Assembly (NCBI GenBank): GCA_002269645.1
Contig: NIVC01000834.1
Span: 62,001-126,000, forward strand
DNA length: 64,000 bases
Direction: 5' to 3'
Source: Macrostomum lignano
Taxonomy: Eukaryota
Shown: piece by piece, positions 12,226-56,124 of the stretch
How positions within the stretch are numbered: position 1 is the first letter of the stretch
How the letters are laid out: every line of letters starts with the position of its first letter
Position numbers and translations under genes: made by a program
The notes under the pieces: model-generated
Told to the model about the DNA's origin: nothing
Database searches by the model: none
What the model saw: only the letters and a program-made list of their open reading frames with translations

Positions 12226-12643
12226 GTGTCGTGTGCTAATGAGGCGAATAGTAAATAAAGTAAAAATAATTACCAATATTTAATAAAGAACTCCAATTTT
12301 AAGATAAGAAACATTATCTTTTAAGATTAATTTTATTTTCTAAGGTTTTTGTAGACGCACTGTTTGTATCAGGGAATGAAGGCCACAGAATTTAGAATTT
12401 TGAGCACTTTTTACCACCATTACGTCGTAAAACAGTGAGTAAACCAAAGGATTTTCAGCTCTCATTAAGAAAGAGTTAGGCGCTTTATTTACAAAACTAT
12501 AAACTGGCTGAAAAAAATAGATGAATAAAGCAAAAAACAGGATACAAATAACTAAATGGCTGCTAGTATTATTTGAGTACCTGATGTGAATTATTGTGTG
12601 ATCTGATATGACAATATAACTGTCAGATGATCAGAGTTCACAT

Positions 12644-31095: not shown

Positions 31096-31592
31096 ACGCC
31101 AATATACACATTTTGCAAAGTACTTCTTGTCCTAAATAGGATAAATTATTGTCCTATTAGAATTTTCCTATAAAAATTAGAGAAGGGAAAATTGAGAAGT
31201 CAAAAAACAGTCATTCATAATATTGACTGGACTGATGAGAGGCAGCAACAACACGGCACAGTAGTTGAGAGTATTAACGAGGCTTGATAAACCTCATGAC
31301 TGGACGAGTAATTAACAAATTCAATAAAAGCATAGTTAAAAAAATTAACAAAATTCTAAAATATTTTATAGTTAAGGGAGACGAAAAATCAATTATTAAA
31401 TTTATTAAAAAATATCTAATAATTATAATTAGAACTTCTATATATGCATAGATAAATTGCGTTATAATGAAAATAATATTGCTATTTAAAAAAGTGTCGG
31501 ACATCAAGACAATCAAAAAGAATTATAGAGAATTAGGACACAGCGCAAGCATAGTAGAGCAAGAGTTGCCAGTCACAATGCAGACAGCTGGC

Positions 31593-34500: not shown

Positions 34501-36396
34501 AGCCAACTGTAATATCGTTTTGTGGTTATGTGGAAGGCCTTCCACTTATTTCTACCGTTCTTTTGTGAAAGTCAAATCCGCGCGCGATTCTATGATAAAC
34601 AATTTGTTTTAATTTTCATAATAATTTTCTAACCGCGCCTTTCCACTACCCCCCGGCCCCGCCCCGCTCCAATTTTGATTGCCTTTCTCGGAATTCCAGC
34701 CTAAAGCTGCCATGTACATTTCAGTGGACTGGCCAATGTACATTATTGCTAAACCATTTAGCAAGTTGTTTACGCCTGCAAGCTTTGAGCTTCTAAACTT
34801 ATCAAAGTCAGTTCAGCCGCCTTTATTTTTATAAAATAGCTTATGTATTCTTCTTTTTGCTACTGAACTGAAAGTAGAAAGCTGTTTTGCTAAGTATATG
34901 CCTGAGTGGCTCATCTAGTTATTTTAGTATCTGTGGCCTGCCCTAAATCCTCGGAATTCAGAAATGTTTGAATACCAATATATAGATAAAAATGAAAAAC
35001 TTTCTCATACTAGACTACTTAAAGTAAAAAATATAAGAAAAAAGAACTTTAGCAAGTATACAAAAATCATCTGCTATCAAGCAGAGAAAGAGGGACAAAG
35101 TCTCAAGTAAATGATGCCTGTCAAACATGTCCTGTCTCGTTTTCTAGGCCTCTAGTTAAGCTCAACTCGAAGGCTTGCTATCTCTATCTCTACCTAGCTA
35201 TATGTAGGACAGGATGGGCTATAATTGCAGGTATTTCCAAACTACAGAAACTCTCCCGAGTTGGGAAAATAAAGGGCCCGCATCGACAGGCATCAGCTAG
35301 ATTAGCAATGCAAAGATATGCTCGCCTAGTGAGATGTCTGCTTTCAAATTTGAGTGCCGCCTTGAAGCAGTCAAGCACGCAAAAAAGTTCAAGCATAACT
35401 CACTCCTTCCGGCTGAGATGCCATGGCTCAATGGGGGAGTTGCTGAGATGCCATGGCTCAATGGGGGAGTTTCTGAGATGCCATGTCTCAATGGGGGAGT
35501 TTCTGAGATGCCATGGCTCAATGGGGGAGTTGCTGAGATGCCATGGCTCAATGGGGGAGTTTCTGAGATGCCATGGCTCAATGGGGGGGTTTCTGAGATG
35601 CCATGGCTCAATGGGGGAGTTGCTGAGATGCCATGGCTCAATGGAAGAATTGCTGAGATGCCATGGATCAATGGGGGAGTTCCTGAGATGCCAAGACTCA
35701 ACGTGCAGTAAAAATCAGAGAAAACATACAATAGCCTAAAGAACTTTCATTTAGGACTTTCGGCACCTCTGCTGAGGGGATCGGACACATTGGATACTCT
35801 CACAGTTCTTTTTTTTCGCGCGCAGGCTCTAAGGTCATAAATTAAAACAGAGAGGAATTTTAGCGTCAACCTTGGACAACCGTCGCTAAAGAAAGGAAGC
35901 AAATAAAAGTACACCGTACACAAGCTGTACAGCTGCTTTGCACTCCAAAGAGGTTTTTTATTGATAGCTAAGAATTGCGCTAAACTTCAGCCCATTGCAC
36001 CACATACAGCAGATCCCAAAGCTAAAGGTGACGCTGTGAAAGAGCGAGTTGAAGCCTGAGCTAAAAAAATGTTGAAATTCGATGCAATATACAAGAGATC
36101 GCAGTTGAGACTTGTGCTCCCTTTTAGGAAACTAACACCCCGAGCTGCCCTTGACTGCTCTATATCGAGGAACAGGCTCTATGTTTAGACAGTGAAGATA
36201 AGAGATTATAATAAAAAATGCGCCACAAAATAAAGCTGGGAATCTCGACTATAGAGTGGAATAAAAATAGAAACCCACATCTATCCTGACTGAGAATGAC
36301 TGACAAACTGAATCAATCACTTAAGGAAGCAGACAGACAAATGCTGATATGGGAGGTAGACAGGCAAATAGGCAAACGGACAGGTACACACAGACT

Positions 36397-36431
<35 letters not shown>

Positions 36432-36467
36432 CGACAGACAGACAGACAGACAGACAGGCAGACAGAC

Positions 36468-36499
<32 letters not shown>

Positions 36500-36599
36500 C
36501 GACAGACAGACAGACAGACAGACAGGCAGACAGACAGATAGACAGACAGACAGACAGACAGGCAGGCAGGCAGACAGATAGACAGACAGACAGACAGAC

Positions 36600-36686
<87 letters not shown>

Positions 36687-36699
36687 TAGACAGACACTA

Positions 36700-36742
<43 letters not shown>

Positions 36743-39700
36743 TAGACAGGCGGACAGGCAGACAGACAAACAGAGAGACAGGCAGACATACAGACAGACA
36801 GCCTCAACTCGCCATCAAAGCAGAGCTCCAGACTCACTACTTGGCGCAGTCGATCAGCTGGTACTCATTGGACCGGTCAAAGGAGGCCCTGACGCCCGAG
36901 TCCTGCCAAAGCAGCGCCGTGTAGCGAAAGAACTGCTCTGGGTAGTCGAAGTCGGGCTTGGGCGCCTCAGTCTGCAGGTATTCGATGTAAGGCTCGTAAT
37001 CGGCGTGCTCTAGCGAAATCTGCGGCGTCAGATTGCTCATGGCGCCCGTGATGGACAGGATGGCGTCGCGAATGTTCTTTTTAATGTCCAAAATCTTCTG
37101 CTTTTTCTCTCTGTTAAAGGTAAAAATTGGTTTTGAAAGTTCAGAAACAATCTTGATAAAGATTTAGATGGAAGGACAGATTAACTGGGACTGTCACGCT
37201 AAAGTACTGAGTTCGATTCTTACATTAATTCAGTGCTTTTGCGCTCGTTAAGGTGTATTCAACATGCCAGTGAAGTATGAGACAAAACAGGCCTATGGGC
37301 TACGGTCTGCGATGCTTCACGCCTGCCCCCATCTTCAGCAGGTTAAGGCTGGTGGGAGTTCTGCAACCTCTATTTGCCGCTGGCAGCCGCAGACCACCCC
37401 CCCCCACGCTGTCTCGCAAGTCGACCCAGGGTACCCGTCCCCGCGAGTGTTCAAGGTGGACCCTAGGGCTGCCGGACAGACTGGGCTCCGGCGCTGGCTA
37501 CCCATCCAGTGGCTTTTGCCAAACTTGGGTATGCTGCTCTGGCTCGCCAGTCCGCAGGCTGTGGTACTGCTCAACGTACCCTCTAATGCCTAAGGTGTTC
37601 GACCGTGCCGATGGGCTGGAAGTCCAGGGAGTTGTCTGGTCGCTAGCGGTTCCCCTCCTGGTGTCGGGCCAGCCTTGAGGGTTCTTTTGGCCTACTGCCC
37701 GGTCAGGTGGAGCGGCTGGGTGGGTACCACGCCCCTTTGAGGGTAGCTCACCAACCTTTATCATGGTCTTCGAGCCAACTATGGATAATAAAACCTTATC
37801 TAGGGACAGGGACCCTGCTGGCGACACATGCTTGGGCGCAACCTTGGGATTCACTCGGCCGTTTCTATTGGCAACACACACATGTAAGTCGCTATTGGAC
37901 GAAATAGTAGTCACGTGACTGCTCTCAGCCAATAGCGACTTACATGTGTATGTTGCCAATAGAAACGGCCGGGTGATTCCCAAAGTTGCGCATGTATGAG
38001 GCGACACCAGGGGACCTCCCTGGGCGTTGCCAACCCTTCCTCCATAGCGACCCGTCGGCTGTTCAGGGATTAGGGGAATGGGTGTTTGCGCCTTCCCGCT
38101 GTATAGAAAGTCAAGGCTGCTGTACACTCTGAGGGAGCATATTCCTGCAAAATAGGTACTGACTGTATGCATTCTCAAAGTAAAACAACTATTTCAAAAG
38201 GCTATTCCACTATCCAGCAAAAGCTCAATGTTTTTTCATTCTTTCATCTTCCATTTATAAAGGGCAATTTTTTAGAAATTGAAAATTGGTCAATATAAAC
38301 AAACTTACTCTGGAGTGAAGCCGTCAATGTGCAGGATTCGCATCTGCTTCACAATTGTACTTTTTCCTGACTCTCCAGCGCCTAAAATGTTTACAATAAA
38401 AATGAGAGTTATAGAATAAATTAGACTTATCATTTAAACTCTAGTATGAATATTTCAGTAAAGTTGATAAAAATTATAGGGTCCAAAATTTTTGAATCAA
38501 CTGGGAGTATAAATGCCTTATAACTAGAAAGTTGGGCCAATTTACACCTGCATATAGTTATTACATGCTTGTAGATGCTCAGGAGCAAATTGAGCAGAAT
38601 TGTTGAAGCAATAATGATGAGATAATATGACCAAAGATACTGCACAAAGGTGTCTAAAAATCTTGCAATTAATAGTGCTATTAAAACCATATTGCTTTTA
38701 TCATATCAAATAAATAAATAAATCCCATTTTCTACCTAGAGTTAGGATTTATAATTTATCAAATATAGAAAATTTACAAACTATTTAATTGAGAATTTGA
38801 ATTTTCTTTTTGCATTTACAATTCAAAATAAATCAATAACTTTATTGTGATTAATCTTTATATCTTTTTTCTTTTAAAATAATGACTAAAATTAGAAAAT
38901 ATATTAATTAGGTGAAAATAAAATCTTTAGTATAACCCAAAGCTTATCTAGCATTAGCTTATCTAGTACTACAAGAGTAACAGCTTATTATTTCCAATAA
39001 AATAAGTTTTAGAAACTCTTGTATCATACTCAAGAAGGTAGCACATTATACATTAGAATACACTTTTGGAATGATCTATATGCTCTTTATACACTATGAA
39101 TTCTGGTTGTTTTGCCCCCAAACTGTTTTGGTCATGGACATTTCGCCCCCAGAACAATTTGCCCATAGTCCGTTTTGCCCATAAACCATTTTGGCTATAT
39201 GCATTTTGGCCAAAATGGTGAATATGTAATTTAGAGATACAGCCATGCAGGTATCTTTCTTTTCTTTTTTTCAATGCTAATTTTTAGTTTTAATGTGAAA
39301 AAACTATGATCTGAATTGTTGCTACAATAATTGTGTTATTGCAACTTTGTTTATTACAATTGTAAATTATTATGAGTTTTTTAAAAGTCATTTCTTTCGA
39401 AAGTGTGACAATTAAAGCCAATTTGAACAGCTGAGGATAAGAAAAGGTTTTGGTTTTATAGCAAGGTAAAGACAGAAATACTAAAAGAATAAGATGTCAC
39501 CAAAATTGAAAATTTAAGAACAGAGTTTAAAACTGTAAAGTTTAGAAATGGTCCATGGCTAAAACAGTCTATGGATGAAATGGTCTGTGGGCGAAATGGT
39601 CTGTTGGCGAAATGGTATAGAGGCGAAATGTCCATGGCCAAAATGGTTTATGGGTGAAACGACCGGTTATGTACACTATTTATATAATATTTCTAAGTAT

Positions 39701-40503
39701 GAATATATATTTATAGGCTAGCCATAGCATAGGGTAAAAATATATCATAATTAAATATTGAAGAATACAAGTTAGATTAGGAAGTATAGAAACCCTAGCT
39801 AGAATTTTCTATAACAAAAGTAAAGCCAACTTTTTTGACTATAAGTATAGCCTATACAAACCAAGCTAGGTACTTTTAATCTGTCTAGACTATAGCCTTG
39901 ATATATTAATAAGAGTTGCAATAAAAATTGGTATATTTCTATTAGTTATTATATATTAGGAATATTAACTTTAGCAAATAATATTTATTTCAATGCCTTT
40001 TTTACTATTTTCAAAATCATAATTTACAAAGGAGTTCTCTTCTATTTATCTAACTAAAATCATCTACCTTTTAATCACATTTTGCTTAAAATTGTTACTT
40101 TTGAGTTTGAAAAATTTACAAGAACTCATTCTCTTAAAAATAAAAAATCAATTAATATATTTATACAATGACTGAGAATTATGATTGATGAAAAATATAT
40201 TTAGGAACACTTATTTAAGGCCCATATGATACATTAATACTAAGCACAATGGACAACCTTACTGCAATTTTTTTTACTTTCAGGCAGCAAATATTTTTTA
40301 AATAACTAAGACAAATGCACATCGAAAATGTCATTCTCATCCTTATAAAATAAAAAACAAATATGAACTGTTATCATACCCAGAAGTAAAAGTCGATGAG
40401 TTGACTTGTAATCCTTTCTCTCCTTCTCAAGCTTTCTTTCAATGTTTTTCGAAAGTTCACTTTTTTCCGTTGCTAAATTCTTTTTTCCACCAAAACAACC
40501 CAT
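31593..40503 (-). CDS. GNAS: Heterotrimeric G protein alpha subunit, Gs class, 375 aa, 7 coding exons
   Basis: Exons 40503-40380, 38381-38309, 37110-36838, 34469-34161, 33000-32867, 32408-32341, 31739-31593 total 1128 nt in frame with GT-AG junctions. MGCFG N-terminus, G1 [20 protein letters not shown] (Arg equivalent to the cholera toxin site), DVGGQR, FLNKQD, TCAVDT. The C-terminus [11 protein letters not shown] is diagnostic of G-alpha-s. Confidence 0.97.
31810..32220. repeat. Intronic minisatellite, 16-bp unit TTGTACACTGTTGGAT
   Basis: Direct reading. Last intron of the G-alpha-s gene. Confidence 0.93.
32450..32760. repeat. Intronic tandem repeat of alternating ~22-bp units (AATCCGCCTCTAGAATACTCATT / CCCTAATCCTCTTCTAGAATACT)
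   Basis: Direct reading. Confidence 0.8.
33055..34125. repeat. Intronic minisatellite, 22-bp unit TTCTAG(G/A)GCTGCTTCA(A/G)GGAG(G/A), ~48 copies, degenerate at both edges
   Basis: Direct reading. Confidence 0.93.
35413..35697. repeat. Intronic minisatellite, 30-bp unit GAGATGCCATGGCTCAATGGGGGAGTT(G/T)CT, ~9.5 copies
   Basis: Direct reading. Confidence 0.93.
36390..36800. repeat. (GACA)n microsatellite abutting a G-alpha-s splice donor
   Basis: Direct reading. About 100 tetramer units with GATA/GGCA interruptions. Confidence 0.97.
37827..37998. mobile_element. 172-bp foldback MITE, copy 2 (8-bp TSD, hAT-like)
   Basis: Homologous to 1902-2073 and the same length. Flanks TGGCGACA (37819-37826) and AGGCGACA (37999-38006) match at 7/8. 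Confidence 0.8.
39098..39671. mobile_element. MITE-like element with inverted subterminal tandem repeats in G-alpha-s intron 1
   Basis: Left TTTTGCCC/TTTCGCCC-type repeats (39105-39215) mirror right GGCGAAATGG repeats (39545-39664). Flanking 8-bp direct repeat TACACTAT at 39090-39097 and 39672-39679. Confidence 0.6.
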
Positions 40504-43531: not shown

Positions 43532-46500
43532 ATGAGGCGGCAGCGGCTATTGCCGCCAATTTTACTTTTGCTGGCACTGATTTTGCTGCTGCTGGACTGC
43601 GGACAGTGCAAAAAGTCAGGCTCCGAGCATGGTAGGTACTGTAGGCTGGTAAGATACACAGGTGTAGCATCTGCACTGCACGAACTTTCTCATTGTCAGA
43701 CAGTGCCAATTGCGTAAACATTCCATGCCAATATAGAGATTTGAGAATTTTCTCTTTTGTGAGCATGGAAACTGTGATTGATGCTGTAGCATTCTGTATC
43801 TGATTCACTGATTCTTCTGATGTTGATTCACTACGGATTGCTTTCACAAGATCGAAATTTCACATCGTGGAAGACAGTAAACCTTACAAGCTCTCGATCA
43901 AAGCGACAGATATATGTTGTACAGTAGTGTTTACTATTTATAGACTTTAACCATGGCGTAAGAATTTAATCAAACGACTTGGCCTAGCAGGTTGCCCTCC
44001 AAGATCGGAGACTAAGTCGGCTTGTCGAACTGACGGACTTCAAAGCGTGGTTATCACGCTCTACAAATGGAATCCCTATTTGAATCGGTGCCAGAGGAAC
44101 ATACAATTAAAAGAGGTCTCTTGCGACAAAGCCGGCGCTAAAAAAGGTGGGAGTAAATGATTTTTATTGTCTAGAAATTCTCAACTCTGTTTTCAGATAT
44201 TCTTTACGCCCGATTACCAAACAAAGAAACAAAGACAAAGCTCTGACAAAGATCTCAATTAAAATTAAAGTGAAAACAGCGTCACAAGGCTTTGAAGCAA
44301 ACGTAGGCCTGATCTGTCTGGGGCGGCGTCGCCATCAGCTAGCAGGCAGTCGACTAAAAGCTGAGTGCACGCATGCCTGCCTGCGTTTCCATATTTTTAT
44401 GTGCCCAGAAATCAGTGGAATAGACAGAACTGGCTCAGCACTGCTTGCTGAAAGATGTCGCCGAAGTTGTTGCGAAAGGGTGCCCAGAACCCTCCTGCGA
44501 AAGCATGTACGTATGTTTAAATTTGAACAGTACAACCCGACACAGATAATGTGGCCTGCCATCTGGAGTTTCCAGCAGTGCAACAGGTCTACGGGTCTAC
44601 GAGTACTTGCTCCACTTGAACTTTCGACGCCATCTACATCAAATCAGCGAACTAACAGCGCCCTTAACTAATAACCACATTTAATAACCTTAACTAATAA
44701 CGACAACATTCCAAAGAAAGTCTCTCTAATTGTAGTCCTCCATAAAATGGCTATGCTTTCCCAAAAACAGCCCTTCAACTGACAGCACGCACCTATCAAA
44801 GAGCCTCGGATGATAATGAACACTCAAGCATAAACCCCGAAAATGGCAAGTTCTTTAAGAAATCTACTGTGCCTCACGCTCACGGTCTTAATCAATGCCC
44901 AGGACGTAGGGGCTAACCCACAAGGCAAAATGAAGTGTAAGCATGCCTGACGATAAATAAAATTAGGGTCACTGTAAACTCCTGCGTGTGTGTGCCTGTG
45001 CGAATGAAAAATCCGCGCATTTGTGTGCCTGCTGAGGCGTCGTCGGCAAAATGGGCAGTAATGCCTCTCGCCGGTTGTGTGACAATGTCGCTTGAAGAGC
45101 GCCAGGGTGCACACAGCTTCTGCCTCTAATAAAAAAATAAATTCTTATACTCGATACCCCCACTCAGGCGTATGCCCGGAGCCAAGAACGGTGGAGCCAG
45201 GGTCCTGTAACAGGCGCAACAATCGGCAGAAGACGCTGGTGATGCACTACGAGCCGGACGGCAAAGGCGGCTGCGTCCTGCACAAAGACTTCGCCTACCC
45301 GAACTGTCCGAAAAAGAAGCCGGGTGGTAAGGATGACTCCGACGGGTGTCCGGAGCCGCGATACTACCAGAAGCCTTGCACCGGTCGGCACAGACAGGTG
45401 TTCAAGTTTTATTACATTCGCGGCAAAGCTAAACCTGGTAGCAGTTCTGCACACGAATGCATTGAAAAGACGTCTATAAATGTGGAGGCTTGCGGCGCTT
45501 TTGGTAAGTTTCCAGCAATCACAGCACAATTTACGCTTCTTGCTTCACCCAAAAGTTCGCAATTCCCAAGCTTCAGAGCTTTAATTCCCAAAATTCAGAT
45601 CCAGCGAAACGTTGTCCATCGCCGAAAGTTGTCGAGAGAGGCCGCTGCAAAGACAGCTTCAGGACGTTGATTCGCACCGAATACTCACGAGATCCAGCTG
45701 GCAAGTGCGTCGAAAGCTCGCACAGCGTAACAGAGAGTTGCGGCGATGGCGAAACGGAAGAGCAGCCTTGTCCGCCAAACGTACTGAAGCAGGGACCATG
45801 CGTTGACGGCCTGCGGCACATCACCCGACAGTACTACGAGCGCATCAAGAAGGAAGGCAACCGATGCGTTCGCAAATTCAGCATCGAGAATCGGCCCTGC
45901 GGCAAGCACAAACCGGGCGTGTGCCCAAAGCCGCGCGTACTGGAGCCGGGTCCATGCACGGACGGCCGGACACGAGTGCTTGTGGCGCACTACGAACCCG
46001 ATCCGAAAACTGGCCATGCAAGGAGCAGCGCACCTTTACTGTCAAGACTTGCGGAAAACACAAGCCAAAGAAGACCAAAGACAAAACAACCAAAGCCGAG
46101 GAATGTCCTGACAAGGCCTACTCCCAGGGTCCGTGCAAGATGGGCTATCGAAACTTGTTCACCTTCAGCTATACCTACTCAGCCGATTTGAAACGCTGCA
46201 TCAAACACGTAGCACTAAAACGGGAGCAGTGCGCCGCGTTGGGTAACACTAAATTTCCGCATCCGCTCAAAGATTTACTTATATGATAAAAATTTCTAAC
46301 TAATAGCTACTTTCCATTTTTTATAAAGTTGCCACAGAAGCTTGTCCATCTGACGACACCGTGGAGACAGGGCCTTGTAAGAGCGGTTTCCGCACCAGCA
46401 TTCTTTATCACTACTCGCGCAACACCGAGGGACACTGCCAAAAGAATGTGAAGAAGGTTACTAGTCCCTGCAGATCGAAGAAAGCAACTGGTGAGTTTCT

Positions 46501-49500
46501 GGTTTAGATTGGCTGCTGACAGTAGCAAACGAGTGTGATTTTGCTGCTCAAAACTCATTGCAGAATGCCCTCCAAAGCGAGTGAAGAAGGTTGGAGGCTG
46601 CGAGGACCGGATCCAAAGGTGGCTCACAGTCTACTTTGAGTGGAACAAGCTCAAGGGTCGGTGCGTGAAGAAGTTCAGAGCGAGAGAAAAACCGTGTAGA
46701 GAGGCTGCCTCAGGATCTACAGGAGCTGCAAAGAGTGAGTAGACCAACTAATTATCTCGAGCACGTACTGTACTTAGCCACATTCCGGTACAACAGTCGA
46801 GCTACAATACTTCTCAATCTTCAATCGTTACCAGGTAAAAAGTGTCCGAAGCGACGAGTGATGGAGCCCGGACCGTGCATTGACGGATCCAGAAAGGTGC
46901 TCGTCGAGCATATGAGTACAGTGAGAAGCGAGGTCGCTGTATCGCTCACAGAGACTTCATGCATCAGAAGTGCGGCGAGAAGGCCAAGAAGAAAAAGAAG
47001 AAGTCTACTCCCGGAGTCGACTTGAAGCACGAGTGTCCGGAGAAGACGGTCAACCAGGGCGCGTGTCGGAAGGGGGGCTACAGGACAGTGAGCACAGTGT
47101 ACTTTGTGTTTGTGAAGGCTCTGGGTCGATGTGTGAGGAAGGTCAAACAGGAGGACGAGAAGTGCGCCTTGCTGGGTAAGACATTAGCAATATTTTAATC
47201 AAAAAATAATTTTTCGATATGATTTTTTGATCCCCACTGTACCATGCAGTACGAGTAATTCTATCTTGTCTTGTATGTTGTTTTACCTTGCACTTAATGG
47301 TATTAGCTACTGCATTTAGCGCTTGTACTCTGCCTTTATGGCGAGACTGATATTTTCAGTCAGTCAGAAAGGCAGAAACTGCTGCAAAGACGTACTATAA
47401 ATGTTTTGATTGTCTCCGGAACTGTTCTTCTGTCTGAGTGTGGCACCACACCAAGGCAGGATTTTTAAACACCTCAGGGACCAATTTCATGAAGCACTGC
47501 TAACTGTTACACTGTATTTCACAGCTGCTAGTGAACTTTTGGTTTTATGAGTCTAGCTGTTGTAAACAGATTTTTACCAGCCTGCTAACTTTTGTCTTCA
47601 CGAGCTAAAGTTTAGCATCCTTGATAGGCGACTAAGAATGGAGATTCCACTTTTCGACGCGCTTCAAGCAGCTGATCTCCCGGTCGATAGTCGTCTGCCG
47701 AGAGAGTTTAAAGATCGCATGAATTTCGCCGCCGCTGATGACTTTTAGCAGCGCTTCCGAATGAACCCAGAATTACGTTCAATTTCTGGCGGGGGTCTTT
47801 TGGCCCGAAGTTGGAATACGATGCGCCAAGAAGTAGAAGCTTGAGCGCACGTGAGCAAACGCTGACCACTTTGCGATGCTACGCACCCATTAGTTTCTAT
47901 CAGACGTACTCTGGGATGCAAATGGGCCTTCTGAATCGACAGTGACAAATTTGAATTCGAAGTCACGAAATGCCGCTTCACTGGCCCAACGTCAGCGAGC
48001 TCCGAATATTTGAGCCTTCTCGCTTTAAAAGAGCCATATTCGCCCCCACATGCATGTAGATGTTTGCCTATGGCACAACCTTGCTGTTAACTGGCTGGCT
48101 CTGCTAGTTAGCAGCTCAGACATGAAACCAAAATTTCTCAACAGTCGGTTAGCAGCGTGAAGTGGGCCCAAAAGTGTATTTTTTGAAACAAATAGCTAAT
48201 GATTGCATTTTTTGCGCCCACCGTTACTACACTTATAGCGCTTCACTTACTTCATGTAATCTTAATATGCGCAGCAGGGTTGAGGTCAGCATCCAATGAA
48301 TTATTATCTGTTGCTCTGTTTAAAAGCTTAAAAGTTCGTGCACCTGCAATTTGTCGTTGGTCTTAACAGCTCTCGCCATGGCTTGAATAGCTTGTATGCA
48401 TCAGGATCTAATGTACACGTACTTTGATCTTGATGTAGTGAAAGTTTTTGTGTACGCTCGTATAAACATAACGCAAAAATTTTAATACCCGAACGCATGG
48501 CGACAAATTGAGGGATAGCTACGATTTTCTACTAAACGCATTCAAGCCTTTCTTTAGAACAATGATTCGTCCACAAAAGGATATTTCATCTACATATTTA
48601 GGCCTGTAATTTTTTCATACATCGTCATTGATTACGAGTATGTATCGAATTATGACGTTAAGCAGGGCTTTAACAAGTGCAAGTAGTTTACAATACTCAC
48701 AGTAATGAAGTAAAAACTGAAATACGGATTTTTCGCCATAGTCTGCTTCTTTTGAGTGCAGGCGTTTACTTCTGAAGCTAAAAAGCAAAGTTATATGATA
48801 TAATATACACTTTATATTGAAAATTCAGTGAAAAACAAGAGCTGCCCAGCGGACGTTACTCAAGAAGTCGGACCCTGCGTGAACGGGTACCGCACTAACA
48901 TCGTCTACACATTCAAGAGAGATCTGGAAGGTCGATGCGAGAAAAAGTCCAAGAAGATCACAATCACTTGCAGTGATGAGAAAGCCAAAGGTAAATACGA
49001 CAGTACGTGTTTGAATTTTTCCAGGTAGTTCTGGATTAACACTGAATTGCCCATTTCGATAATTTCAGTCTGCCCTCCAAAGCGAGTGAAGAAGGTCGGA
49101 GGCTGCGAGGACCGGATCCAAAGGTGGCTCACAGTCTATTTCGAGTGGAACAAGCTCAAGGGTCGGTGCGTGAAGAAGTTCAGAGCGAGAGAAAAACCGT
49201 GTAGAGAGGCTGCCTCAGGATCTACAGGAGCTGCAAAGAGTGAGTAGACCAACTAATTATCTCGAGCACGTACTGTACTTAGCCACAATTCCGGTACAAC
49301 AGTCGAGCTACAATACTTCTCAATCTTCAATCGTTACCAGGTAAAAAGTGTCCGAAGCGACGAGTGATGGAGCCCGGACCGTGCATTGACGGATCCAGAA
49401 AGGTGCTCGTCGAGCACTATGAGTACAGTGAGAAGCGAGGTCGCTGTATCGCTCACAGAGACTTCATGCATCAGAAGTGCGGCGAGAAGGCCAAGAAGAA

Positions 49501-52500
49501 AAAGAAGAAGTCTACTCCCGGAGTCGACTTGAAGCACGAGTGTCCGGAGAAGACGGTCAATCAGGGCGCGTGTCGGAAGGGGGGCTACAGGACAGTGAGC
49601 ACAGTGTACTTTGTGTTTGTGAAGGCTCTGGGTCGATGTGTGAGGAAGGTCAAACAGGAGGACGAGAAGTGCGCTCTCTTGGGTGAGTTGTTGCTTCTTT
49701 AGAGCATGCTTCATATTTGGGTGTGAGCGCTGGATTTAAGCTGTAGTCTGGCTTGTTGGTGCGCGTGCACTTAGATGTGCACGTCTGGCTGGTTTGGGGG
49801 TTGGGGTTTAGCGCTGCGGCGTGTGCGTGCTTAGGGTGGTTACACCCACCCCAACTTTGGCAATAAATATATTGGCGTGAGCCAGTGAGGTCTCCTCACG
49901 TTTTGTTATTCTCTGCAATTCAACCCACGGTCTTACACTGGTGGCAGCGGTCTCAGTATGGCCAAATCAGAGCAAGCCAGTTTATTGCCTCCAAAGTTCA
50001 GCGGCGACTCCAACGTGAGAATGTGGCTAAGCACGTTTGAGGACTTCGCCGACGACTGCGAATGGGACGACAAGAAGAAGGCAAAGAAGCTGAGACTGCT
50101 GGTGACAGGAGAAGCGCAAATCTTCGTCTGGGAGCAGCCGGCAGACGTGTCAGCCAGCTATGAAAGGCTGAAGGAGAAGCTGATCGAGTGCTTCGGCAAC
50201 AGTCTGAGCTGCTACAGAGCAATGGAGGAGTTTGAAGAGCGAAAGCGACAGCCCAACGAGTCGCTGAGGGAGCTCGCCTACAGCCTGAAGCTTCTCCACC
50301 TTCGGGCCCGCCCGGACGACTCCGTGGCGGCTCGGGAAAAGGACGTGAAGTTTCGTCTGATGCGCCTCCTGCCATCTGCCGTGAGAGATGCGCTGTTGAA
50401 GGACCAGGACGCGGACTCGTGTTCGCTGGCCGCCATCGTCGACAGAGCTGCGCAGCTTGAGCTGGTGAGCCACGCAACTACAGCCTCATCAGCCGCGGTG
50501 TCGGTAGAAGACAGACGGCTGAGCCAGCTGGAGCAGCAGATGCAGCAGCTGACAGCCAGCGTGCGAACGGGACCACCCGGAAGAGACAGGCGTCAGAAGG
50601 GACCCATTAGGTGCTTCAGCTGCGGCGAGCCGGGTCACATTGCTAGGCGGTGCCCAAAGGCGATCGGCAGCCGCTGCAGCCGGTGCTCAGGCAAGGGTCA
50701 CTCCGCCGCGGTGTGCCCGACACCAACTGGTCAGCCGCAGGGAAACTTCTGAGGGTCGGCAGCCTGGGGCCAGCACCGACCCGCTCAAAAGGGGCCCTCA
50801 GATCAGCGCCTTCAGTCTTCGTGAAGGTGCACTTTGGCAGCGTGTCAGCGCCTGCTCTGCTCGACACCGGCGCGCAAGTTTCGTTGATGGACAAGTCGCT
50901 GTTCGACAGACTGCAGTGCAAGATCGACTCCACCGACATCGGTGCGCTGCCGACGGCTGTCGACGGATCCCGGCTGCGCTGCCTTGGCCTGTCAGCAGCG
51001 GATGTTTCGATCGGCCAGACCATCCGCGTGCGCCATCGCTTCACAGTCGTGGACGGCATCCAGCCCAGCCTGATCATCGGCATGGACTTCATTGGCGAGG
51101 TGTCGCAGGCGATGACCATTGACATTAAAGAAGGCGTCGTCAGGTTCGACGGCACAGCTGTGCCTTTCAGCAGCGAGCCGGCTCGAGCAGATTGTCGCCT
51201 GGTGCCGAGTGTCCTGGTGGCGCGTGTGGCGGCAACTACGGAGCTGCCCGCCCGCAGCGAGAAGCTGGTGTGGCTCAAGGTGGATTCCAGCGGCGAGCAG
51301 GGAGTCTTTGAGCCGTCTGAGGACTTCGTGAAGTCCACTGCCGTCCTGCCGGGCCGCGTGCTGGCGGTCTCGGACGACTGCCGCATCCCGGTGAAAATGT
51401 GCAACCTTGCAGAGGAGCCCGTGCTGCTGTACGCCAACAAGGCGGTCGGCACGTTCGAAGGCGCGATGACAGACGGGGACGGTCGCCAGGAGGCGGCCCA
51501 GGAGAACCCCGTCGGTTGGAACATCAACGCGGAGCTGCCCGAACCGGATGCTGCGAGGCTGCGACAGCTGTTGGAGAGCAACGAGGACCTGTTCGCCAGG
51601 CACGAGTACGACCTGGGCACGACGGCGTTGCTGCAGCACCAAATCGAGCTGGAGCCGGGAGCGCGGCCACACCGGCAGGTCCAGCGCCGGCTGCCGCTGT
51701 CTGTGCGAGACCAGGTGGACAAGAAGATCGGTCAGATGCTGGAAAGCGGCATCATCGAACCGTCGACATCGCCATGGGCCAGCAACCTGCTGGTGGTCCG
51801 CAAGAAGAACGGCGACATCAGACTGTGCACGGACTGGCGGCAGCTCAACGCCTGCACGGTCAAGGATGCATACCCGCTGCCGCACCTGCAGCAGGCCATG
51901 GATGCGCTTGTCGGATGCTCCTGGTTCTCCACCATCGACTGCCGGCAGGGCTACCACCAGGTGGAGGTGGCGGAGGAGGACCGGTACAAGACGGCTTTCT
52001 ATTCGACGCGCGGCCTGATGCAATTCTGCAAGATGGGCTTCGGGATGTGCAATGCCCCGGCGACGTTCCAGCGGCTCATGGAGCTGGTGATGTCCGGCCT
52101 GTCCTGGGAGTCCGTGCTGACTTATATCGACGACATCATTGTCTTCAGCAGGACGTTCGACGAGCACTTAGAGAGGCTGGCGGAAGTTTTTAAGCGGCTG
52201 CGAGACGCGGGACTCAAGCTGCACAAGGCCAAGAGCGCGTTCGGCCATCGCCGGGTGCTGTACCTGGGACACCTGATCAGCGAGCAGGGCATCGCACCGG
52301 ATCCCGGCAAGGTCGAGGCCATTCGCAGCATGCCCAGCCCAACGACGAACGAGGAGGTGAAGCGGTTTCTTGGAATGCTGGGTTTCTACCGCCGGTTCAT
52401 CCGAGGCTTCAGCCAGACGGCGAGGGTCCTGCACGACGTCAGCGTGAAATCGAGGGACTTCGCGTGGAGCAGCGACTGCGAGCGAGCGTTCCGCGAGTTG

Positions 52501-55500
52501 AAGGACCGGCTGACGACAGCTCCGGTGCTGAGACTGCCAGATTTCACCAAGCAGTTTGTGCTCAGCTGCGACAGCAGTCAGTTCGCCGTCGGCGCGGTGC
52601 TCAGCCAGCTGCACGGTGACGCCGAGCTGCCTGTGGCGTTCGCCTCTCGCACCCTCAACAAGGCCGAGCGCAACTACTCGGCGACCGACCGCGAGCTGCT
52701 GGCGCTTGTCTGGAGTTTGAAGCACTTCAGGACGTACCTGCTGAGTGTTCCGAGCTTCAGAGTCTACTCGGACCACCGGCCACTGCAAGGTCTGCTGGCA
52801 ACGAAGGACCCCGAAGGTCGGCTGGCGCGATGGCTTTCTACGCTGCAGCAGTTTTCGTTCGAGCTGCTGTACCGGCCTGGCATGGACAACGTCGTGCCGG
52901 ATGCGCTGAGCCGGGTGGCCGGCACGCGCCTGCAGCCTCGGTGGGACGACAGCCGCCTGCACGAGGAGCAACTGCAAGATCCGCTGCTGAGCAAGGCGTT
53001 CCAGGCGCTGACCGAAGGGATTGACAGCCTGTCCGATTCATGGGCGGCGCAGGTTCGCGAGCTGCTGGACGAGGCCTCGGTGAGCTCGGCGGGAGTCCTG
53101 CTGGTCGGTGGCCGGCCAGTCATTCCCGGTCACCTGCGGCCACATTTCTGCAGCAGGCGCACTCGTGTGACCAGAGCGGACACCTCGGCGTCGACAAGAC
53201 CGGAGCGAGATTGTCTGAGCGCTGCTGGTGGCCTGGTCTGCGACGGGACGTCGAGAACTGGGTGGCCAGCTGTGCGGTCTGCCTGGCCAAGAAGAGTCCA
53301 ACCAAGCCGCAGAAGGCGCCGCTACAGTCGACGTGCCAGCCGACGGCTCCGTGGCGGCTGGTGCAGATCGACATCAAAGGGCCGCTTCCGCGTACGACTG
53401 ATGGCAAAGCGTACATCCTGAGCATGTGCGACGCCTTCTCCAAGTGGATGGAGACGGCAGCCCTGGCGGCAATCGACGCGGTTACGGTGGCGGATGCGCT
53501 GCTCAAGTCGGTGGTTCTGCGTCACGGCGCTCCTCAGGTGCTGCACAGTGACCAGGGACGGCAATTCGAGAGCGAGGTGTTCGGCCGGCTCTGCGAGAAG
53601 CTGGGCGTCGAAAAGACGCGCACGTCGCCGTTTCATCCGAGCGGCAACGGAATCGTCGAGCGAGGCAACCGGACGCTCGGCGATATGCTGGCGACGACGG
53701 TGGCCGAGAACCAGCAGGATTGGGACAGCAAGCTGCCATATGTGACCTGGGCCTACAACACCTCCGTGCACAGCACCATCGGCCTCAGTCCGTACCAGGT
53801 CCTCCACGGCTGGCCACCGAGGCTGGATCTCGACAGCTGGCTGATAAGCGGCGACCGGCCGGCAGCCGACGGTGGACATCACGGCTTCCTGCGGCGGACT
53901 CAGGAGAACCTGCAGAGCGCCTTCGACACGGTGCACGGCCGACTGCGGAGCGCCCAGGCCGAGCGCAACCGGCTGGCCAACCAGGACTCTCGGTTTGTGC
54001 CGTTCGAAGAGGGCCAGCTCGTGATGCTGCGCAACTCCGTCGTCAAGCGCGGCCAGACGCGGTGTTTGAGCGCCAAGTGGAAGGGGCCGTACCGAGTCCT
54101 GAGGCGCCTGGGCGAGGTCAATTACCGCATCCAGGACGAGACCGGCCGCAGCGCCGGCTGGTGGTGCACCACGACCGCCTCAAGTGCTTCGTGCAGCGGC
54201 GGGCGTCACTGGAGCTTCCGGCCGCAGCAGACCACCAGCCGCCGGCCGCCGACTTCGACAACGACGACACCGTCGCTGAGCCGCCCGGGCAGGCGACCGA
54301 TCCTGGCGGCGACGCGGTGACCTTCTGGCCCGAGCTGCAGGCAGACGAGGCACCCGAGGAGCAGCCGGCGGCACCGGCCGAGCCGGTCACGGTTCCGCGG
54401 CGGTCGGCGAGAGAGCGGCGGCCACCTGACTTGTACATGGCGGGCTTTGCTTGACTCTGGAACTGTCTTTTGCTTCTAGGGGGAAAGTAGTGTAGTCTGG
54501 CTTGTTGGTGCGCGTGCACTTAGATGTGCACGTCTGGCTGGTTTGGGGGTTGGGGTTTAGCGCTGCGGCGTGTGCGTGCTTAGGGTGGTTACACCCACCC
54601 CAACTTTGGCAATAAATATATTGGCGTGAGCCAGTGAGGTCTCCTCACGTTTTGTTATTCTCTGCAATTCAACCCACGGTCTTACAAAGCCAATAATTCG
54701 AGCATTCTTGCTTTCTAGTAAAGCTGGCCTCCTGTCCAAAGGATGACGTAGTGGAGACCGGTCCGTGTCACCGCGGCTTCCGCACGAATATAATCTATCA
54801 ATACACACGCGACCTGGAGGGCCGTTGCGCTCGCGCCGAAAAGTCTGTTACCGAAGAGTGCAAAGGCAGCACTGCTGGTAACTACGAACACTATGTTTTC
54901 GTACTTTACGCTCGTATACTCGTACAGTTGAGAGATGATCATAGGACTGCTGTCAGGCCAAGTGAGAATGTGGGCATCCACAAATGGCACTGCATGCGTA
55001 GTTAGCCCGTGTCCCTGTATAGTTAGCGGAACTCTAGCTGGTTTCAACGCGGGATAGAGGTATGTTCAAATTTTAAATTGCACCTACGGTGACGGTGTCA
55101 AATATAGATTTGTAGACAGGAATACAGACATGAGTTGGATCCCTGTCAGTGGAATCCCAGTCAATGGAATTCCAGATGGAAATTCTCCTCCGTGGATTAG
55201 ACGGTTAAATATGACGGCCAAAGTATGATCCGAATCGCGTCATGAATATTGTATGCTTGCTCTAACAACCATTCACCTAGACTGTTTGCCTCCATCTCGT
55301 AAGCTGGCCAAACCGTGCTCAGCCTCTGGATTCGAGCGCTGGCTAACCACATACTATGTTTATAACAAGCTCAAGAAGCGCTGCGTGAGGAAGCTTCGAG
55401 TTAAAGAAGTTTCCTGTCGTCGAGTGAAAAGTAAGCAGCTAGCGTACTGTGTCAAATGTACATGAGATAATACAAACTGACGCTTAAATAATAATTAAAA

Positions 55501-56124
55501 CCGAAGTCAGTCTCTTAAATTCAGACAAAACAGAACGCTTCCTCGCCCCAACAAACCGCAGAGTGCCCAACGCCGCGGGTGATCGAGCCCAGCCCCTGTA
55601 GCAAAGGCAAGCAGCGCCTTCTGATTGAGCACTACGAGCTGGACGCTAAGCTGGGCCGCTGTCGAATGAAGCAAGATTACGTAAATAGAAAATGCGGCAA
55701 GCCAACGAAGCGACAGGCCGCAGCGGCCAAGCACCACTGTCCGGACTCTACTTATCATCAGAAGCCTTGCCGGAAGGACGGCTACCGGAGCGTTCTGAAG
55801 ATCTATTATCGATACAACTCGGCCAAAGGTCGATGCGTTAGAAACGTTCGAGTCGACGACGAGAAATGCAGCCGATTGGGTAAGGATTCTGCTACAATAC
55901 ATTTGTATATTACGCATATTGATAGCTATATAACTACAATTCCTTCTCACAAAGTCGCCACGCGAGCCACCTGCAAAGCCGACGAGATGGTCGAAGAGGG
56001 CCCCTGCAAGAAGGGATTCCGGGAGAACATCATCTACAGGTACGAAAGGAACAAAGACGGCAGCTGCGTGAGGAAGGAGCGTCGAGTCAGCCTGGCTTGC
56101 GTTGAAAAGAAGGTTGTACCTTAG
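43532..56124 (+). CDS. Secreted Lys/Arg- and Cys-rich protein with 20 tandem four-Cys modules, (D-A-B-C)x5, ~1124 aa, 14 exons; two 1-nt frameshifts in this sequence
   Basis: Exons 43532-43631 (signal peptide MRRQRLLPPILLLLALILLLLDCGQC), 43991-44146, 45168-45503, 45599-46242, 46338-46490, 46564-46734, 46835-47175, 48829-48990, 49069-49239, 49341-49682, 54719-54877, 55281-55430, 55562-55879, 55955-56124. All introns are GT-AG and phase 1. Module pattern C-x9/10-C-x19-26-C-x10-C. 1-nt deletions at ~46016 and ~46910. Confidence 0.8.
44843..44936 (+). CDS. Candidate alternative first exon (signal-peptide-like MASSLRNLLCLTLTVLINAQDVGANPQGKMK) of the Cys-rich gene
   Basis: ATG, hydrophobic stretch and a phase-1 donor GTAAGC compatible with the acceptor at 45168. 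Confidence 0.4.
47638..47995 (+). pseudogene. Decayed PIF/Harbinger (HARBI1-like) transposase N-terminal fragment in an intron
   Basis: Frameshifted pieces DDF*QRFRM, PKLEYDAPRSRSLSAREQTLTTLRCYAPISFYQ and DANGPSESTV match the typical Harbinger N-terminal HTH region (F..RFRM / LS..EQ.L..LR.YA.GS.Y / G.S.STVS). Confidence 0.6.
49742..49937 (+). repeat. 5' LTR
   Basis: TGTAGTCTGG...GGTCTTACA, identical by eye to 54491-54686. Contains AATAAA. Confidence 0.97.
49939..49951 (+). promoter_or_regulatory. Primer binding site, complementary to the tRNA-Leu 3' end
   Basis: TGGTGGCAGCGGT, 1 nt after the LTR. It is the reverse complement of the metazoan tRNA-Leu 3' end ACCGCUGCCACCA. Confidence 0.8.
49958..50752 (+). 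CDS. gag: Gypsy Gag, 264 aa, two CCHC zinc knuckles
   Basis: PPKFSGD..WL..FE capsid-like start, CFSCGEPGHIARRC and CSRCSGKGHSAAVC. Confidence 0.93.
   Translation: MAKSEQASLLPPKFSGDSNVRMWLSTFEDFADDCEWDDKKKAKKLRLLVTGEAQIFVWEQPADVSASYERLKEKLIECFGNSLSCYRAMEEFEERKRQPNESLRELAYSLKLLHLRARPDDSVAAREKDVKFRLMRLLPSAVRDALLKDQDADSCSLAAIVDRAAQLELVSHATTASSAAVSVEDRRLSQLEQQMQQLTASVRTGPPGRDRRQKGPIRCFSCGEPGHIARRCPKAIGSRCSRCSGKGHSAAVCPTPTGQPQGNF
50740..50782 (+). promoter_or_regulatory. Predicted -1 programmed ribosomal frameshift signal (slippery GGGAAAC plus downstream hairpin)
   Basis: G GGA AAC at 50740-50746, then a 6-nt spacer, then stem GGGTCGG...CCGACCC. pol is in the -1 frame relative to gag. Confidence 0.75.
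50740..54454 (+). CDS. pol: Gypsy Pol (protease, RT, RNase H, integrase with GPY/F tail), interrupted by two 1-nt frameshifts (~53140, ~54150)
   Basis: LLDTGA protease, RT with YIDD, CDSS..VGAVL RNase H, HHCC (AH..GHLG..C..C), integrase core D..D..E, WKGPY. The reading continues across ORFs 50650-53421, 53040-54320 and 53720-54454. Confidence 0.92.
54491..54686 (+). repeat. 3' LTR
   Basis: Identical to the 5' LTR. Preceded by the PPT and followed by TSD AAGC. Confidence 0.97.

What the first reader, a model, noticed from the sequence alone, without database searches (positions are those of the whole stretch)
43532..56124. Secreted polycationic protein built from 20 four-Cys modules in a higher-order (D-A-B-C)x5 array, with midkine/pleiotrophin-like Cys spacing
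Seen: hand-splicing gives a signal peptide plus 20 modules of C-x9/10-C-x19-26-C-x10-C. They fall into four recognisable subtypes in strict order: D (CPP..C..W/Y..NKLK.RC), A (VMEPGPC..VLVEHYE), B (YQKPC/NQGAC..YR.V..Y) and C (ETGPC..GFRTNIIY.Y.RD.EG.C). This order repeats exactly five times. Every intron is phase 1 and every internal exon length is a multiple of 3 once two 1-nt deletions are corrected. The protein is extremely K/R-rich. Known: the heparin-binding midkine/pleiotrophin C-terminal domain is C-x9-C-x21-C-x9-C with a (W)G-x-C motif, a TSR-like beta-sheet. Inference: this may be an undescribed giant poly-MK/TSR-like glycosaminoglycan-binding protein (mucus, adhesive, antimicrobial or seminal-fluid role), evolved by duplication of a 4-module unit.
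Basis: partly seen in the sequence, partly recalled or inferred. Interest (0 to 1): 0.85.

Follow-up and report, generated by a model that had tools for sequence, protein, structure and literature searches.

The report
Flatworm secreted cationic cysteine-repeat protein gene
This is a real, expressed gene of the flatworm Macrostomum lignano encoding a secreted, very positively charged protein built from 20 small two-disulfide modules of a domain family that no database describes; a link to midkine/thrombospondin repeats is not shown.

Summary
Window 43532-56124 (+) carries a 14-exon gene with GT-AG, phase-1 introns. It encodes a signal peptide plus 20 modules of C-x9/10-C-x19-26-C-x10-C in strict (D-A-B-C)x5 order, with K+R 23% and net charge about +134. 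The window is Macrostomum lignano contig NIVC01000834.1. RNA-seq-guided GenBank models (BOX15_Mlig000808g3, Mlig001823g1) match my splice chain.

This copy has two 1-nt deletions and a Ty3/Gypsy LTR retrotransposon in one intron. A sister locus has both sites intact and six D-A-B-C units.

The midkine/TSR reading is not demonstrated:
- No Pfam match.
- No sequence match to any solved structure.
- hhalign against pleiotrophin/midkine C-domains gives probability below 6%, but a control shows this test has little power.
- Foldseek finds nothing meaningful.
- AlphaFold2 does predict a confident three-stranded antiparallel sheet per module.

Only about a dozen relatives exist among 1.8 billion proteins: Macrostomum, a monogenean and a few environmental contigs. 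This is an undescribed, apparently flatworm-centred domain family.

Published positional RNA-seq classes the gene as not testis-, ovary- or tail-specific. That argues against seminal-fluid or tail-adhesive roles. The most likely role, by inference only, is a multivalent polyanion-binding component of a body-wide secretion.

The parts
43532..43631 (+). Exon 1: ATG and signal peptide (MRRQRLLPPILLLLALILLLLDCGQC...), phase-1 donor GT at 43632
   Evidence: identical N-terminus in P0003
43988..44146 (+). Exon 2: module D1. It has a tandem NAGNAG acceptor (43988 or 43991); the GenBank model of the sister locus uses the 43991 equivalent
45168..45503 (+). Exon 3: modules A1-B1
45599..46242 (+). Exon 4: modules C1-D2-A2-B2 in one exon. 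It carries a 1-nt deletion at about 46015/46016 inside A2 (window GGCCATGC, sister locus GGCCGATGC)
46329..46490 (+). Exon 5: module C2
46564..46734 (+). Exon 6: module D3
46835..47175 (+). Exon 7: modules A3-B3. It carries a 1-nt deletion at about 46911 (GAGCATATGAG against GAGCACTATGAG in copy A4)
48829..48990 (+). Exon 8: module C3
49069..49239 (+). Exon 9: module D4
49341..49682 (+). Exon 10: modules A4-B4
46557..49687 (+). Recent tandem duplication with a period of about 2506 nt. Block 46557-47180 (D3-A3-B3 with introns) is 97-100% identical to 49062-49687 (D4-A4-B4). The sister locus has three copies
49742..54686 (+). Ty3/Gypsy LTR retrotransposon inside the B4-C4 intron. LTRs are 196 nt and identical (49742-49937 and 54491-54686), with TG..CA ends and a 4-bp target-site duplication AAGC. 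ORFs encode gag (zf-CCHC), protease-RT-RNase H and integrase
   Evidence: same insertion in L002
54719..54877 (+). Exon 11: module C4
55281..55430 (+). Exon 12: module D5
55562..55879 (+). Exon 13: modules A5-B5
55955..56124 (+). Exon 14: module C5 and stop codon (...ACVEKKVVP*)

Best explanation
This is a genuine, transcribed, protein-coding gene of Macrostomum lignano. In this copy it carries two single-base deletions and an intronic retrotransposon.

The product is a secreted, strongly cationic protein. It is a chain of 20 modules here and 24 in the sister locus. Each module is about 44 residues with four invariant cysteines, so two disulfides are expected. Each is predicted to fold as a three-stranded antiparallel beta-sheet. 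Linkers are short (5-20 residues) and often lysine-rich. The modules belong to a domain family absent from Pfam and from the PDB. They come in four subtypes arranged as a D-A-B-C super-repeat that has been amplified by unit duplication.

Shown: the gene structure, the module family, the subtype order, the signal peptide, the charge, the transcript support and the expression that is not body-region specific.

Inferred: it works outside the cell as a long, multivalent binder of polyanions such as sulfated glycans, mucus or matrix components, or microbial surfaces. Conserved basic positions flank Cys3 and lie at the start of strand 2. It would be part of a secretion made along the whole body (epidermal, rhabdite or mucous glands, gut or matrix), not in the gonads or tail organs.
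For: Gene model and phases.

Identity with RNA-seq-guided GenBank models. The annotation method is described in PMC5730564.

Signal peptides are also present in homologues P0004 and P0005.

Single-module AlphaFold2 model: pLDDT 91.2, strands 5-13, 16-27 and 32-43. In the four-module model each module is again three strands, with pTM 0.33, so there is no fixed packing between modules.

Family-wide signature over 54 modules from at least five sources:
- Four invariant Cys.
- Pro after Cys1 in 78% of modules.
- One position that is always aromatic or His.
- Basic residues in 54-57% of modules at five positions.

Net charge is +96 in the modules and +36 in the linkers.

The exhaustive profile search found only 17 proteins at E<=0.001 among 1.84 billion. 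Roughly a dozen are real family members: Macrostomum, the monogenean Cichlidogyrus casuarinus, and environmental or SRA contigs.

Positional RNA-seq is 'Non-Specific', with no germline or neoblast flag, and expression is lower in octets than in isolated worms (log2FC -1.25, padj 0.0047).

Between the two loci, exons differ at 0.51% of sites and introns at 0.92%. At least two of the eight exon substitutions change the protein; the remaining six were not individually classified.
Against: No binding, localisation or cell-type data exist.

The monogenean homologue P0005 is nearly neutral (net +4). Extreme positive charge is therefore not a family-wide property, and polyanion binding may be specific to this lineage.

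The window copy needs two frame corrections, and its GenBank model skips or truncates the affected exons. This particular copy may be non-functional.

RNA-seq counts cannot be assigned cleanly between near-identical copies.

The disulfide connectivity was not read from coordinates.
Confidence: 0.5

Rival explanations
1. The modules are diverged members of the midkine/pleiotrophin or thrombospondin type-1 repeat (TSR) superfold. On this reading the protein is a giant poly-TSR-like heparin-binding protein.
For: The Cys spacing is nearly the same as the pleiotrophin C-domain, which is C-x9-C-x21-C-x9-C in the sequences retrieved (module spacings).

A Gly precedes Cys2 in both.

The predicted fold is three antiparallel strands.

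The proteins are basic.

One protein with Pfam TSP_1 repeats of the four-Cys type (P0015; TSP_1 E 1.7e-7) matches profile positions 1-23 (E 1.3e-4). It aligns over 39 columns with the Cys in register (hhalign probability 87%).
Against: No Pfam PTN_MK_C, PTN_MK_N or TSP_1 hit for any family member at E<=10.

No PDB sequence hit.

hhalign against the pleiotrophin/midkine C-domain gives probability 0.9-5.8%, and against the N-domain 0.3%.

Foldseek shows no midkine or TSR structure in the top 50.

The Trp of WGxC and the W/R ladder of TSRs are absent.

P0015 was picked out of 1.8 billion proteins, and its score sums four near-identical repeats, so it is not independent evidence.

Of the very many TSR proteins in the library, only this one scored.
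Confidence: 0.2
2. The copy in this window is a decaying pseudogene, with two real frameshifts and a retrotransposon. The function would be carried by the sister locus or loci.
For: Both 1-nt deletions lie outside homopolymer runs and are absent from the sister locus L002.

The GenBank CDS for this locus starts downstream of the first frameshift in the wrong upstream frame. It also skips exons A3B3-C3-D4.

7 of 8 exon substitutions are T/A in the window against C/G in L002.
Against: The assembly is PacBio/Canu polished with Pilon. It contains 180 Mb of duplicated blocks at >=95% identity (PMC5730564), where indel polishing is unreliable.

One deletion lies in the 97-100% identical duplicated block.

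Exon divergence from L002 is only 0.5%.

The retrotransposon is intronic and is shared with L002, so it does not by itself disable the gene.
Confidence: 0.4
3. It is a polyprotein precursor that proprotein convertases cut into about 20 small disulfide-rich cationic peptides, for example antimicrobial peptides.
For: Several linkers contain KK, KR or RR runs. The modules are small, cationic and disulfide-stabilised.
Against: The B-to-C and C-to-D linkers lack consistent dibasic sites (AALVATEA, GDGETEEQP, KGSTAD).

In homologue P0010 the linkers are only 2-5 residues.

The conserved subtype order argues for function as an intact chain.
Confidence: 0.05
4. It is a reproductive or adhesive-organ secretion: seminal fluid, cement gland, or tail duo-gland adhesive like Mlig-ap1/ap2.
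For: Basic, Cys-rich, repetitive secreted proteins are typical of flatworm adhesives. Mlig-ap1 has K/R-rich regions (PMC6410801).
Against: Positional RNA-seq gives equal normalised expression in the head-only fragment and in the whole worm, class 'Non-Specific'.

The Mlig-ap1 KR regions are low-complexity sequence of a different kind, and that protein is a different 5407-aa protein with vWD, lectin and EGF domains.
Confidence: 0.04

Closest known systems
Midkine / pleiotrophin C-terminal domain (Pfam PF01091)
   Same: Four Cys at almost the same spacing. The domain is small, basic and extracellular. A three-stranded antiparallel sheet is predicted here; for midkine it is known from my own knowledge of PDB 1MKC. 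A Gly precedes Cys2.
   Different: There is no detectable sequence or profile similarity. The Trp of WGxC is missing. The module occurs 20-24 times in tandem, whereas midkine/pleiotrophin has one C-domain paired with an N-domain. There is no Foldseek match.
Thrombospondin type-1 repeat (Pfam PF00090), especially four-Cys variants such as the repeats of P0015
   Same: Both are elongated three-stranded modules used in long tandem arrays in secreted proteins. The motif 'GPC-x2-G-x-(R/Q)' resembles 'WGPC-x-DG-x-Q-x-R' of P0015.
   Different: There is no WxxW motif, no Arg ladder, four rather than six Cys, and no Pfam hit.
Kunitz/BPTI domain
   Same: A 'GPC' motif is followed by an aromatic-rich strand and 'G-x-C'. 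This resemblance is from memory only.
   Different: There are four rather than six Cys and the spacings are longer. No helix is predicted, and there is no Pfam Kunitz_BPTI hit at E<=10.
Macrostomum lignano adhesive proteins Mlig-ap1/Mlig-ap2 (PMC6410801)
   Same: Same organism. Both are secreted, Cys-rich, repetitive and strongly cationic, and polyanions (heparin) interfere with Mlig-ap1 function.
   Different: These are different genes with different domains, and they are tail-specific. This gene is not tail-specific.

Membership tests
Midkine/pleiotrophin C-domain (PF01091) | Four Cys spaced C-x9-C-x21-C-x9-C | tested here: met
   Modules are C-x9/10-C-x19-26-C-x10-C. Pleiotrophin C-domains retrieved here are C-x9-C-x21-C-x9-C. 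The match is close but not identical: the last spacer is always 10.
Midkine/pleiotrophin C-domain (PF01091) | Significant match to the Pfam family model | tested here: not met
   No PF01091 or PF05196 hit at E<=10 for the full protein, single modules or homologues.
Midkine/pleiotrophin C-domain (PF01091) | Profile-profile similarity to pleiotrophin/midkine C-domains | tested here: inconclusive
   hhalign probability is 0.9-5.8%. The control comparison of the pleiotrophin C-domain against its N-domain is also only 1.2%, so the test lacks power at this domain size.
Midkine/pleiotrophin C-domain (PF01091) | Conserved W-G-x-C before Cys2 | tested here: not met
   The consensus is G-P-C with no Trp. 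Trp is 0.5% of the protein and occurs only in strand 2 of D modules.
Midkine/pleiotrophin C-domain (PF01091) | Three-stranded antiparallel beta-sheet | tested here: met
   AlphaFold2 model with pLDDT 91, strands 5-13, 16-27 and 32-43. This is a prediction only.
Midkine/pleiotrophin C-domain (PF01091) | Disulfides C1-C3 and C2-C4 | not testable with these tools
The strand geometry makes this pairing plausible, but it was not read off.
Midkine/pleiotrophin C-domain (PF01091) | Structural match to solved midkine/pleiotrophin structures | tested here: not met
   Foldseek against the PDB gives a best E of 0.33. The top 50 hits are ribosomal uS17 and other generic sheets, with no midkine or pleiotrophin. 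Foldseek has low power for a 44-residue query.
Midkine/pleiotrophin C-domain (PF01091) | Heparin / glycosaminoglycan binding | not testable with these tools
   This needs heparin-affinity chromatography of recombinant modules.
Thrombospondin type-1 repeat (PF00090) | WxxW motif, RxR ladder and six-Cys pattern, with a match to the Pfam model | tested here: not met
   No TSP_1 hit. There is no WxxW and there are four Cys. A single bridging protein, P0015, aligns, but it was selected after the search.
Kunitz/BPTI (PF00014) | Six Cys spaced C-x8-C-x15-C-x7-C-x12-C-x3-C, with a match to the Pfam model | tested here: not met
   There are four Cys at different spacings, and no Pfam hit at E<=10.
M. 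lignano seminal-fluid or tail-adhesive secretions | Tail-region-specific expression in positional RNA-seq | tested here: not met
   Mlig000808.g3 counts are A 239, B 271, C 302, D 341, class 'Non-Specific' (PMC7336406, Tables S6 and S8).
Undescribed flatworm four-Cys module family (this report) | Signal peptide plus tandem modules C-P-x7-9-G-x-C-x2-G-[FY]-[RQ]-...-[YF]-...-[GN]-[RK]-C-[V]-[RK]-K-x7-C | tested here: met
   Supported by alignments A1 and A2. Members are the M. lignano copies, P0004, P0005 (Cichlidogyrus), P0007, P0010-P0012, and P0014/P0024.

The most novel reading that the evidence does not exclude
The module is a previously unrecognised branch of the TSR/midkine superfold that is centred on flatworms. 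It would have been expanded into a giant multivalent glycosaminoglycan-binding protein of 20-24 modules. Its four-module super-repeat would predate the split between Macrostomorpha and parasitic Neodermata. The family could then mark a conserved flatworm secretion, such as mucus, rhabdites or a surface coat, that is relevant to parasite-host interfaces.
Probability: 0.2. Interest if true: 0.55.

Novelty: new variant of a known kind. Interest (0 to 1): 0.4.

Why it matters
Modular secreted proteins built from small disulfide-rich repeats are common, so the kind is familiar. This particular module has no Pfam family, no solved relative and only about a dozen relatives in 1.8 billion proteins. 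One of those relatives is in a parasitic monogenean.

It therefore defines an uncharacterised domain family, seemingly flatworm-centred, with a confident predicted fold. UniProt's automatic names for near-identical copies contradict each other (SUEL lectin, VWFD, DUF4789), which shows that the family is currently mis-filed.

M. lignano supports RNAi, in situ hybridisation and transgenesis. The function of a protein with net charge +130 that is expressed along the whole body can therefore be tested directly. It may bear on flatworm mucus, rhabdite or surface biology.

The locus also shows concerted evolution in progress: copy-number variation of a 2.5-kb exon block between sister loci.

Tried and rejected
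- **Pfam.** I scanned the full protein, single modules and homologues at E<=10. Only sub-threshold chance hits appeared (EVH1_PP4R3, Toxin_13).
- **PDB sequence profiles.** Profiles A1, A2 and A3 gave nothing, or chance hits at E>0.6.
- **Foldseek.** The one-module and four-module models gave only generic beta meanders: uS17, sialidase propellers and GFP barrels.
- **hhalign.** Comparison with pleiotrophin/midkine C- and N-domains was negative, but the control shows little power. My first attempt at the N-domain and TSR controls used faulty regexes and printed stale output; I redid it.
- **Word-indexed search with the 54-module alignment.** It found 11 candidates and no hits, which spent a search.
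- **Extra modules.** tblastn found none in the long introns (44.1-45.1 kb, 47.2-48.8 kb). The 'KGCPEPSCE' stretch near 44450 is not a module.
- **Mlig-ap1/ap2 identity.** Rejected.
- **Polyprotein-precursor idea.** Rejected because dibasic sites in the linkers are inconsistent.
- **Gene IDs in other M. lignano papers' supplements.** No occurrences, or no supplement text held. No single-cell atlas was found.
- **dN/dS between the two loci.** There are too few differences (8) to be meaningful.


Full report
**What is there**

A search of all six reading frames for C-x8-11-C-x17-28-C-x9-11-C finds 21 matches on the + strand. All lie between 43993 and 56100. One unrelated match lies on the - strand of the whole 64-kb window.

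Each module-bearing open stretch is bounded by AG and GT sites in intron phase 1. Joining them gives 14 exons from the ATG at 43532 to the stop at 56124.

All internal exon lengths become multiples of three once a single base is restored at about 46016 (module A2) and about 46911 (module A3).

The product has these properties:
- It is 1128 aa long: a hydrophobic signal peptide followed by 20 modules with spacings 9/10, 19-26 and 10.
- Composition is K 13.5%, R 9.4% and C 7.3%. Net charge is about +134, of which +96 lies in the modules and +36 in the 5-20-residue linkers.
- The four subtypes are real. Same-type pairs score 112 on average against 52 for different types, and 19 of 20 modules have their best match within their own type.
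- The order is D-A-B-C five times.

The exon layout is not one module per exon. A and B always share an exon, and one exon holds C1-D2-A2-B2.

**Where it comes from, and independent support**

The only word-indexed hit is a Macrostomum lignano hypothetical protein, BOX15_Mlig000808g3. It is encoded at this very locus on contig NIVC01000834.1.

That GenBank annotation comes from a genome-guided, RNA-seq-based transcriptome (PMC5730564). It matches my model at 100% over residues 339-468 and 694-1128. However, it starts in a wrong frame just upstream of the first frameshift, and it skips the exons around the second.

A second locus (L002, contig NIVC01001502.1) has the same G-alpha gene upstream and is about 98% identical. 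It encodes BOX15_Mlig001823g1, which matches my residues 1-830 at 826/829, including the signal peptide.

In L002 both frameshift sites are intact.

L002 and a third model (Mlig000884g5) carry three copies of the 2.5-kb D-A-B(-C3) block, where the window has two. The gene therefore has 20 modules here and 24 there. In the window the two copies are 97-100% identical.

The B4-C4 intron contains a complete Ty3/Gypsy LTR retrotransposon:
- It spans 49742-54686.
- The LTRs are 196 nt and identical, and the target-site duplication is AAGC.
- It has gag, protease-RT-RNase H and integrase ORFs.
- The same insertion is present in L002.

**What the module is**

No Pfam family matches the protein, its single modules or its homologues at E<=10. 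There is no PTN_MK_C, PTN_MK_N, TSP_1 or Kunitz hit.

Profiles of 16 modules, 54 modules or nine four-module units match no PDB sequence beyond chance.

AlphaFold2, with the 16-module alignment, gives a confident model (pLDDT 91.2) of three long antiparallel strands at 5-13, 16-27 and 32-43. In the four-module unit, each module again forms three strands. The pTM is 0.33, so the modules behave as beads on a string.

Foldseek against the PDB returns only generic sheets. The best E is 0.33 for the single module, and TM is 0.19 or less for the unit.

I retrieved 120 pleiotrophins, which confirmed the recalled query at 99% identity. I then compared a 66-module profile with 58 unique pleiotrophin C-domains plus one human midkine C-domain entered from memory (59 sequences). 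hhalign probability was 0.9-5.8%.

A control shows that this test cannot see even the accepted relation between the pleiotrophin N- and C-domains (1.2%). The negative result is therefore weak.

One protein with Pfam-recognised four-Cys TSP_1 repeats (P0015) does align with the module profile, with the Cys in register (probability 87%). However, it was itself picked from 1.8 billion proteins by that profile, and its score sums four near-identical repeats. It is a lead, not a test.

The tryptophan of WGxC and the TSR Trp/Arg ladder are absent.

The result is this. The shape is compatible with a midkine- or TSR-like module, but homology is not shown.

**The family**

An exhaustive HMMER profile search of 1.84 billion representatives finds 17 proteins at E<=0.001. 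Apart from a few false positives (bacterial YD-like and other repeat proteins), they are:
- The M. lignano copies.
- A 502-aa transcript from SRA run SRR26183987 (P0004). Its module order is X-D-A-B-C-D-A-B-C.
- A 426-aa protein of the monogenean Cichlidogyrus casuarinus (P0005). It has eight modules, with B-type modules at positions 3 and 7.
- Three short ENA fragments.
- Two JGI contigs (P0010, with at least 18 modules; P0014/P0024, with modules separated by acidic linkers).

These members are documented.

All full-length members start with a signal peptide.

Across 54 modules the family signature is as follows:
- The four Cys are invariant.
- Pro follows Cys1 in 78%.
- One strand-2 position is always aromatic or His.
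- Five positions are basic in 54-57% of modules.

The extreme positive charge is not universal, since P0005 has a net charge of +4.

UniProt's automatic names for near-identical M. lignano copies disagree (SUEL lectin, VWFD, DUF4789). My Pfam scans do not reproduce any of them.

**Function**

Published positional RNA-seq was re-analysed on the Mlig_37v3 transcriptome (PMC7336406, Tables S6, S8 and S9). For Mlig000808.g3 it gives 239, 271, 302 and 341 counts in the four fragments: head only, plus testes, plus ovaries, and whole worm. Normalised values are equal and the class is 'Non-Specific'.

The gene carries no germline or neoblast flag. Expression is lower in worms kept in octets than in isolated worms (log2FC -1.25, padj 0.0047).

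This argues against the prostate/seminal-fluid, cement-gland and tail duo-gland adhesive roles. The gene is also distinct from Mlig-ap1/ap2.

Linkers lack consistent dibasic sites, so a polyprotein precursor is unlikely.

By inference only, my best mechanism is a long, multivalent, disulfide-stabilised polycation secreted along the whole body. It would bind polyanionic partners such as sulfated glycans, mucus or matrix components, or microbial surfaces.

**Status of this copy**

The two single-base deletions may be real, which would make this copy a pseudogene. They may instead be residual errors of a Pilon-polished PacBio assembly in duplicated sequence. I put this near even odds.

Exons differ from L002 at 0.51% of sites and introns at 0.92%. 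At least two of the eight exon substitutions change the protein; the remaining six were not individually classified. That is too few for a selection test.

**Verdict**

The structural part of the interpretation (secreted, polycationic, grown by four-module duplication) is supported. The midkine/TSR homology is unproven. The proposed reproductive or adhesive roles are contradicted by expression data.

This is an undescribed small-domain family in an otherwise familiar kind of modular secreted protein. It is moderately interesting, chiefly to flatworm and domain-evolution specialists.

Noticed in passing
window 49742-54686: A complete Ty3/Gypsy LTR retrotransposon lies in the same orientation as the gene. 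It has identical 196-nt LTRs, a 4-bp target-site duplication AAGC, and three overlapping ORFs: gag with a zinc knuckle, PR-RT-RNase H, and integrase. The same insertion is present in the sister locus L002 despite the identical LTRs.
   Followed up: yes
window 22135-28804: A 6.7-kb satellite of a 20-nt unit (CAGCTTGACTGGCTTTTTAT, about 329 copies). It explains the strong AT skew seen in the composition profile.
   Followed up: partly
window 10651-12228; 13486-14101; 30033-31126; 31814-32238; 33057-34095; 35412-35701; 36386-36801: Further mini- and microsatellite arrays with units of 16/32, 32, 26, 16, 22, 30 and 4 nt. Together with the 20-nt satellite, they occupy a large share of the 10-37 kb part of the window. 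Several create long spurious ORFs.
   Followed up: partly
window 7017-8807 (-): An uninterrupted 596-aa ORF with a full-length match to the amiloride-sensitive sodium channel family (Pfam ASC, E 6e-81). It is an apparently intronless DEG/ENaC channel gene.
   Followed up: partly
window 16015-18375 and 19366-20691 (-): Two long ORFs (786 and 441 aa) on the minus strand have no Pfam hit at E<=1e-5. The first looks like a multi-pass membrane protein. They may be exons of one gene.
   Followed up: no
window about 35864-40503 (-); L002 1-6970: A G-alpha subunit gene lies upstream of the finding in both the window and the sister locus. This shows that the two loci are allelic or homeologous copies, not dispersed paralogues.
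   Followed up: partly
window 43532-46734 compared with L002: Seven of the eight exon substitutions between the two loci are T or A in the window and C or G in L002. This directional bias is unexplained.
   Followed up: no
window 43985-43993: The D1 exon has a tandem NAGNAG acceptor (tagCAG|G). The two choices differ by one codon, Ala-Gly versus Gly. The GenBank model of the sister locus uses the downstream site.
   Followed up: partly
P0015 (ENA metagenome contig, not in the window): A bacterial-looking protein has a PASTA domain, YSFTP-type repeats and four four-Cys TSP_1-like repeats (C-x11-C-x17-C-x10-C). It is the only TSR-type protein that the module profile picks up.
   Followed up: partly
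UniProt entries A0A1I8JML5, A0A1I8I7P7, A0A1I8JD99 (M. lignano copies): Near-identical copies of this protein carry three different automatic names (SUEL-type lectin, VWFD, DUF4789 domain-containing). None is reproduced by Pfam scans here.
   Followed up: partly
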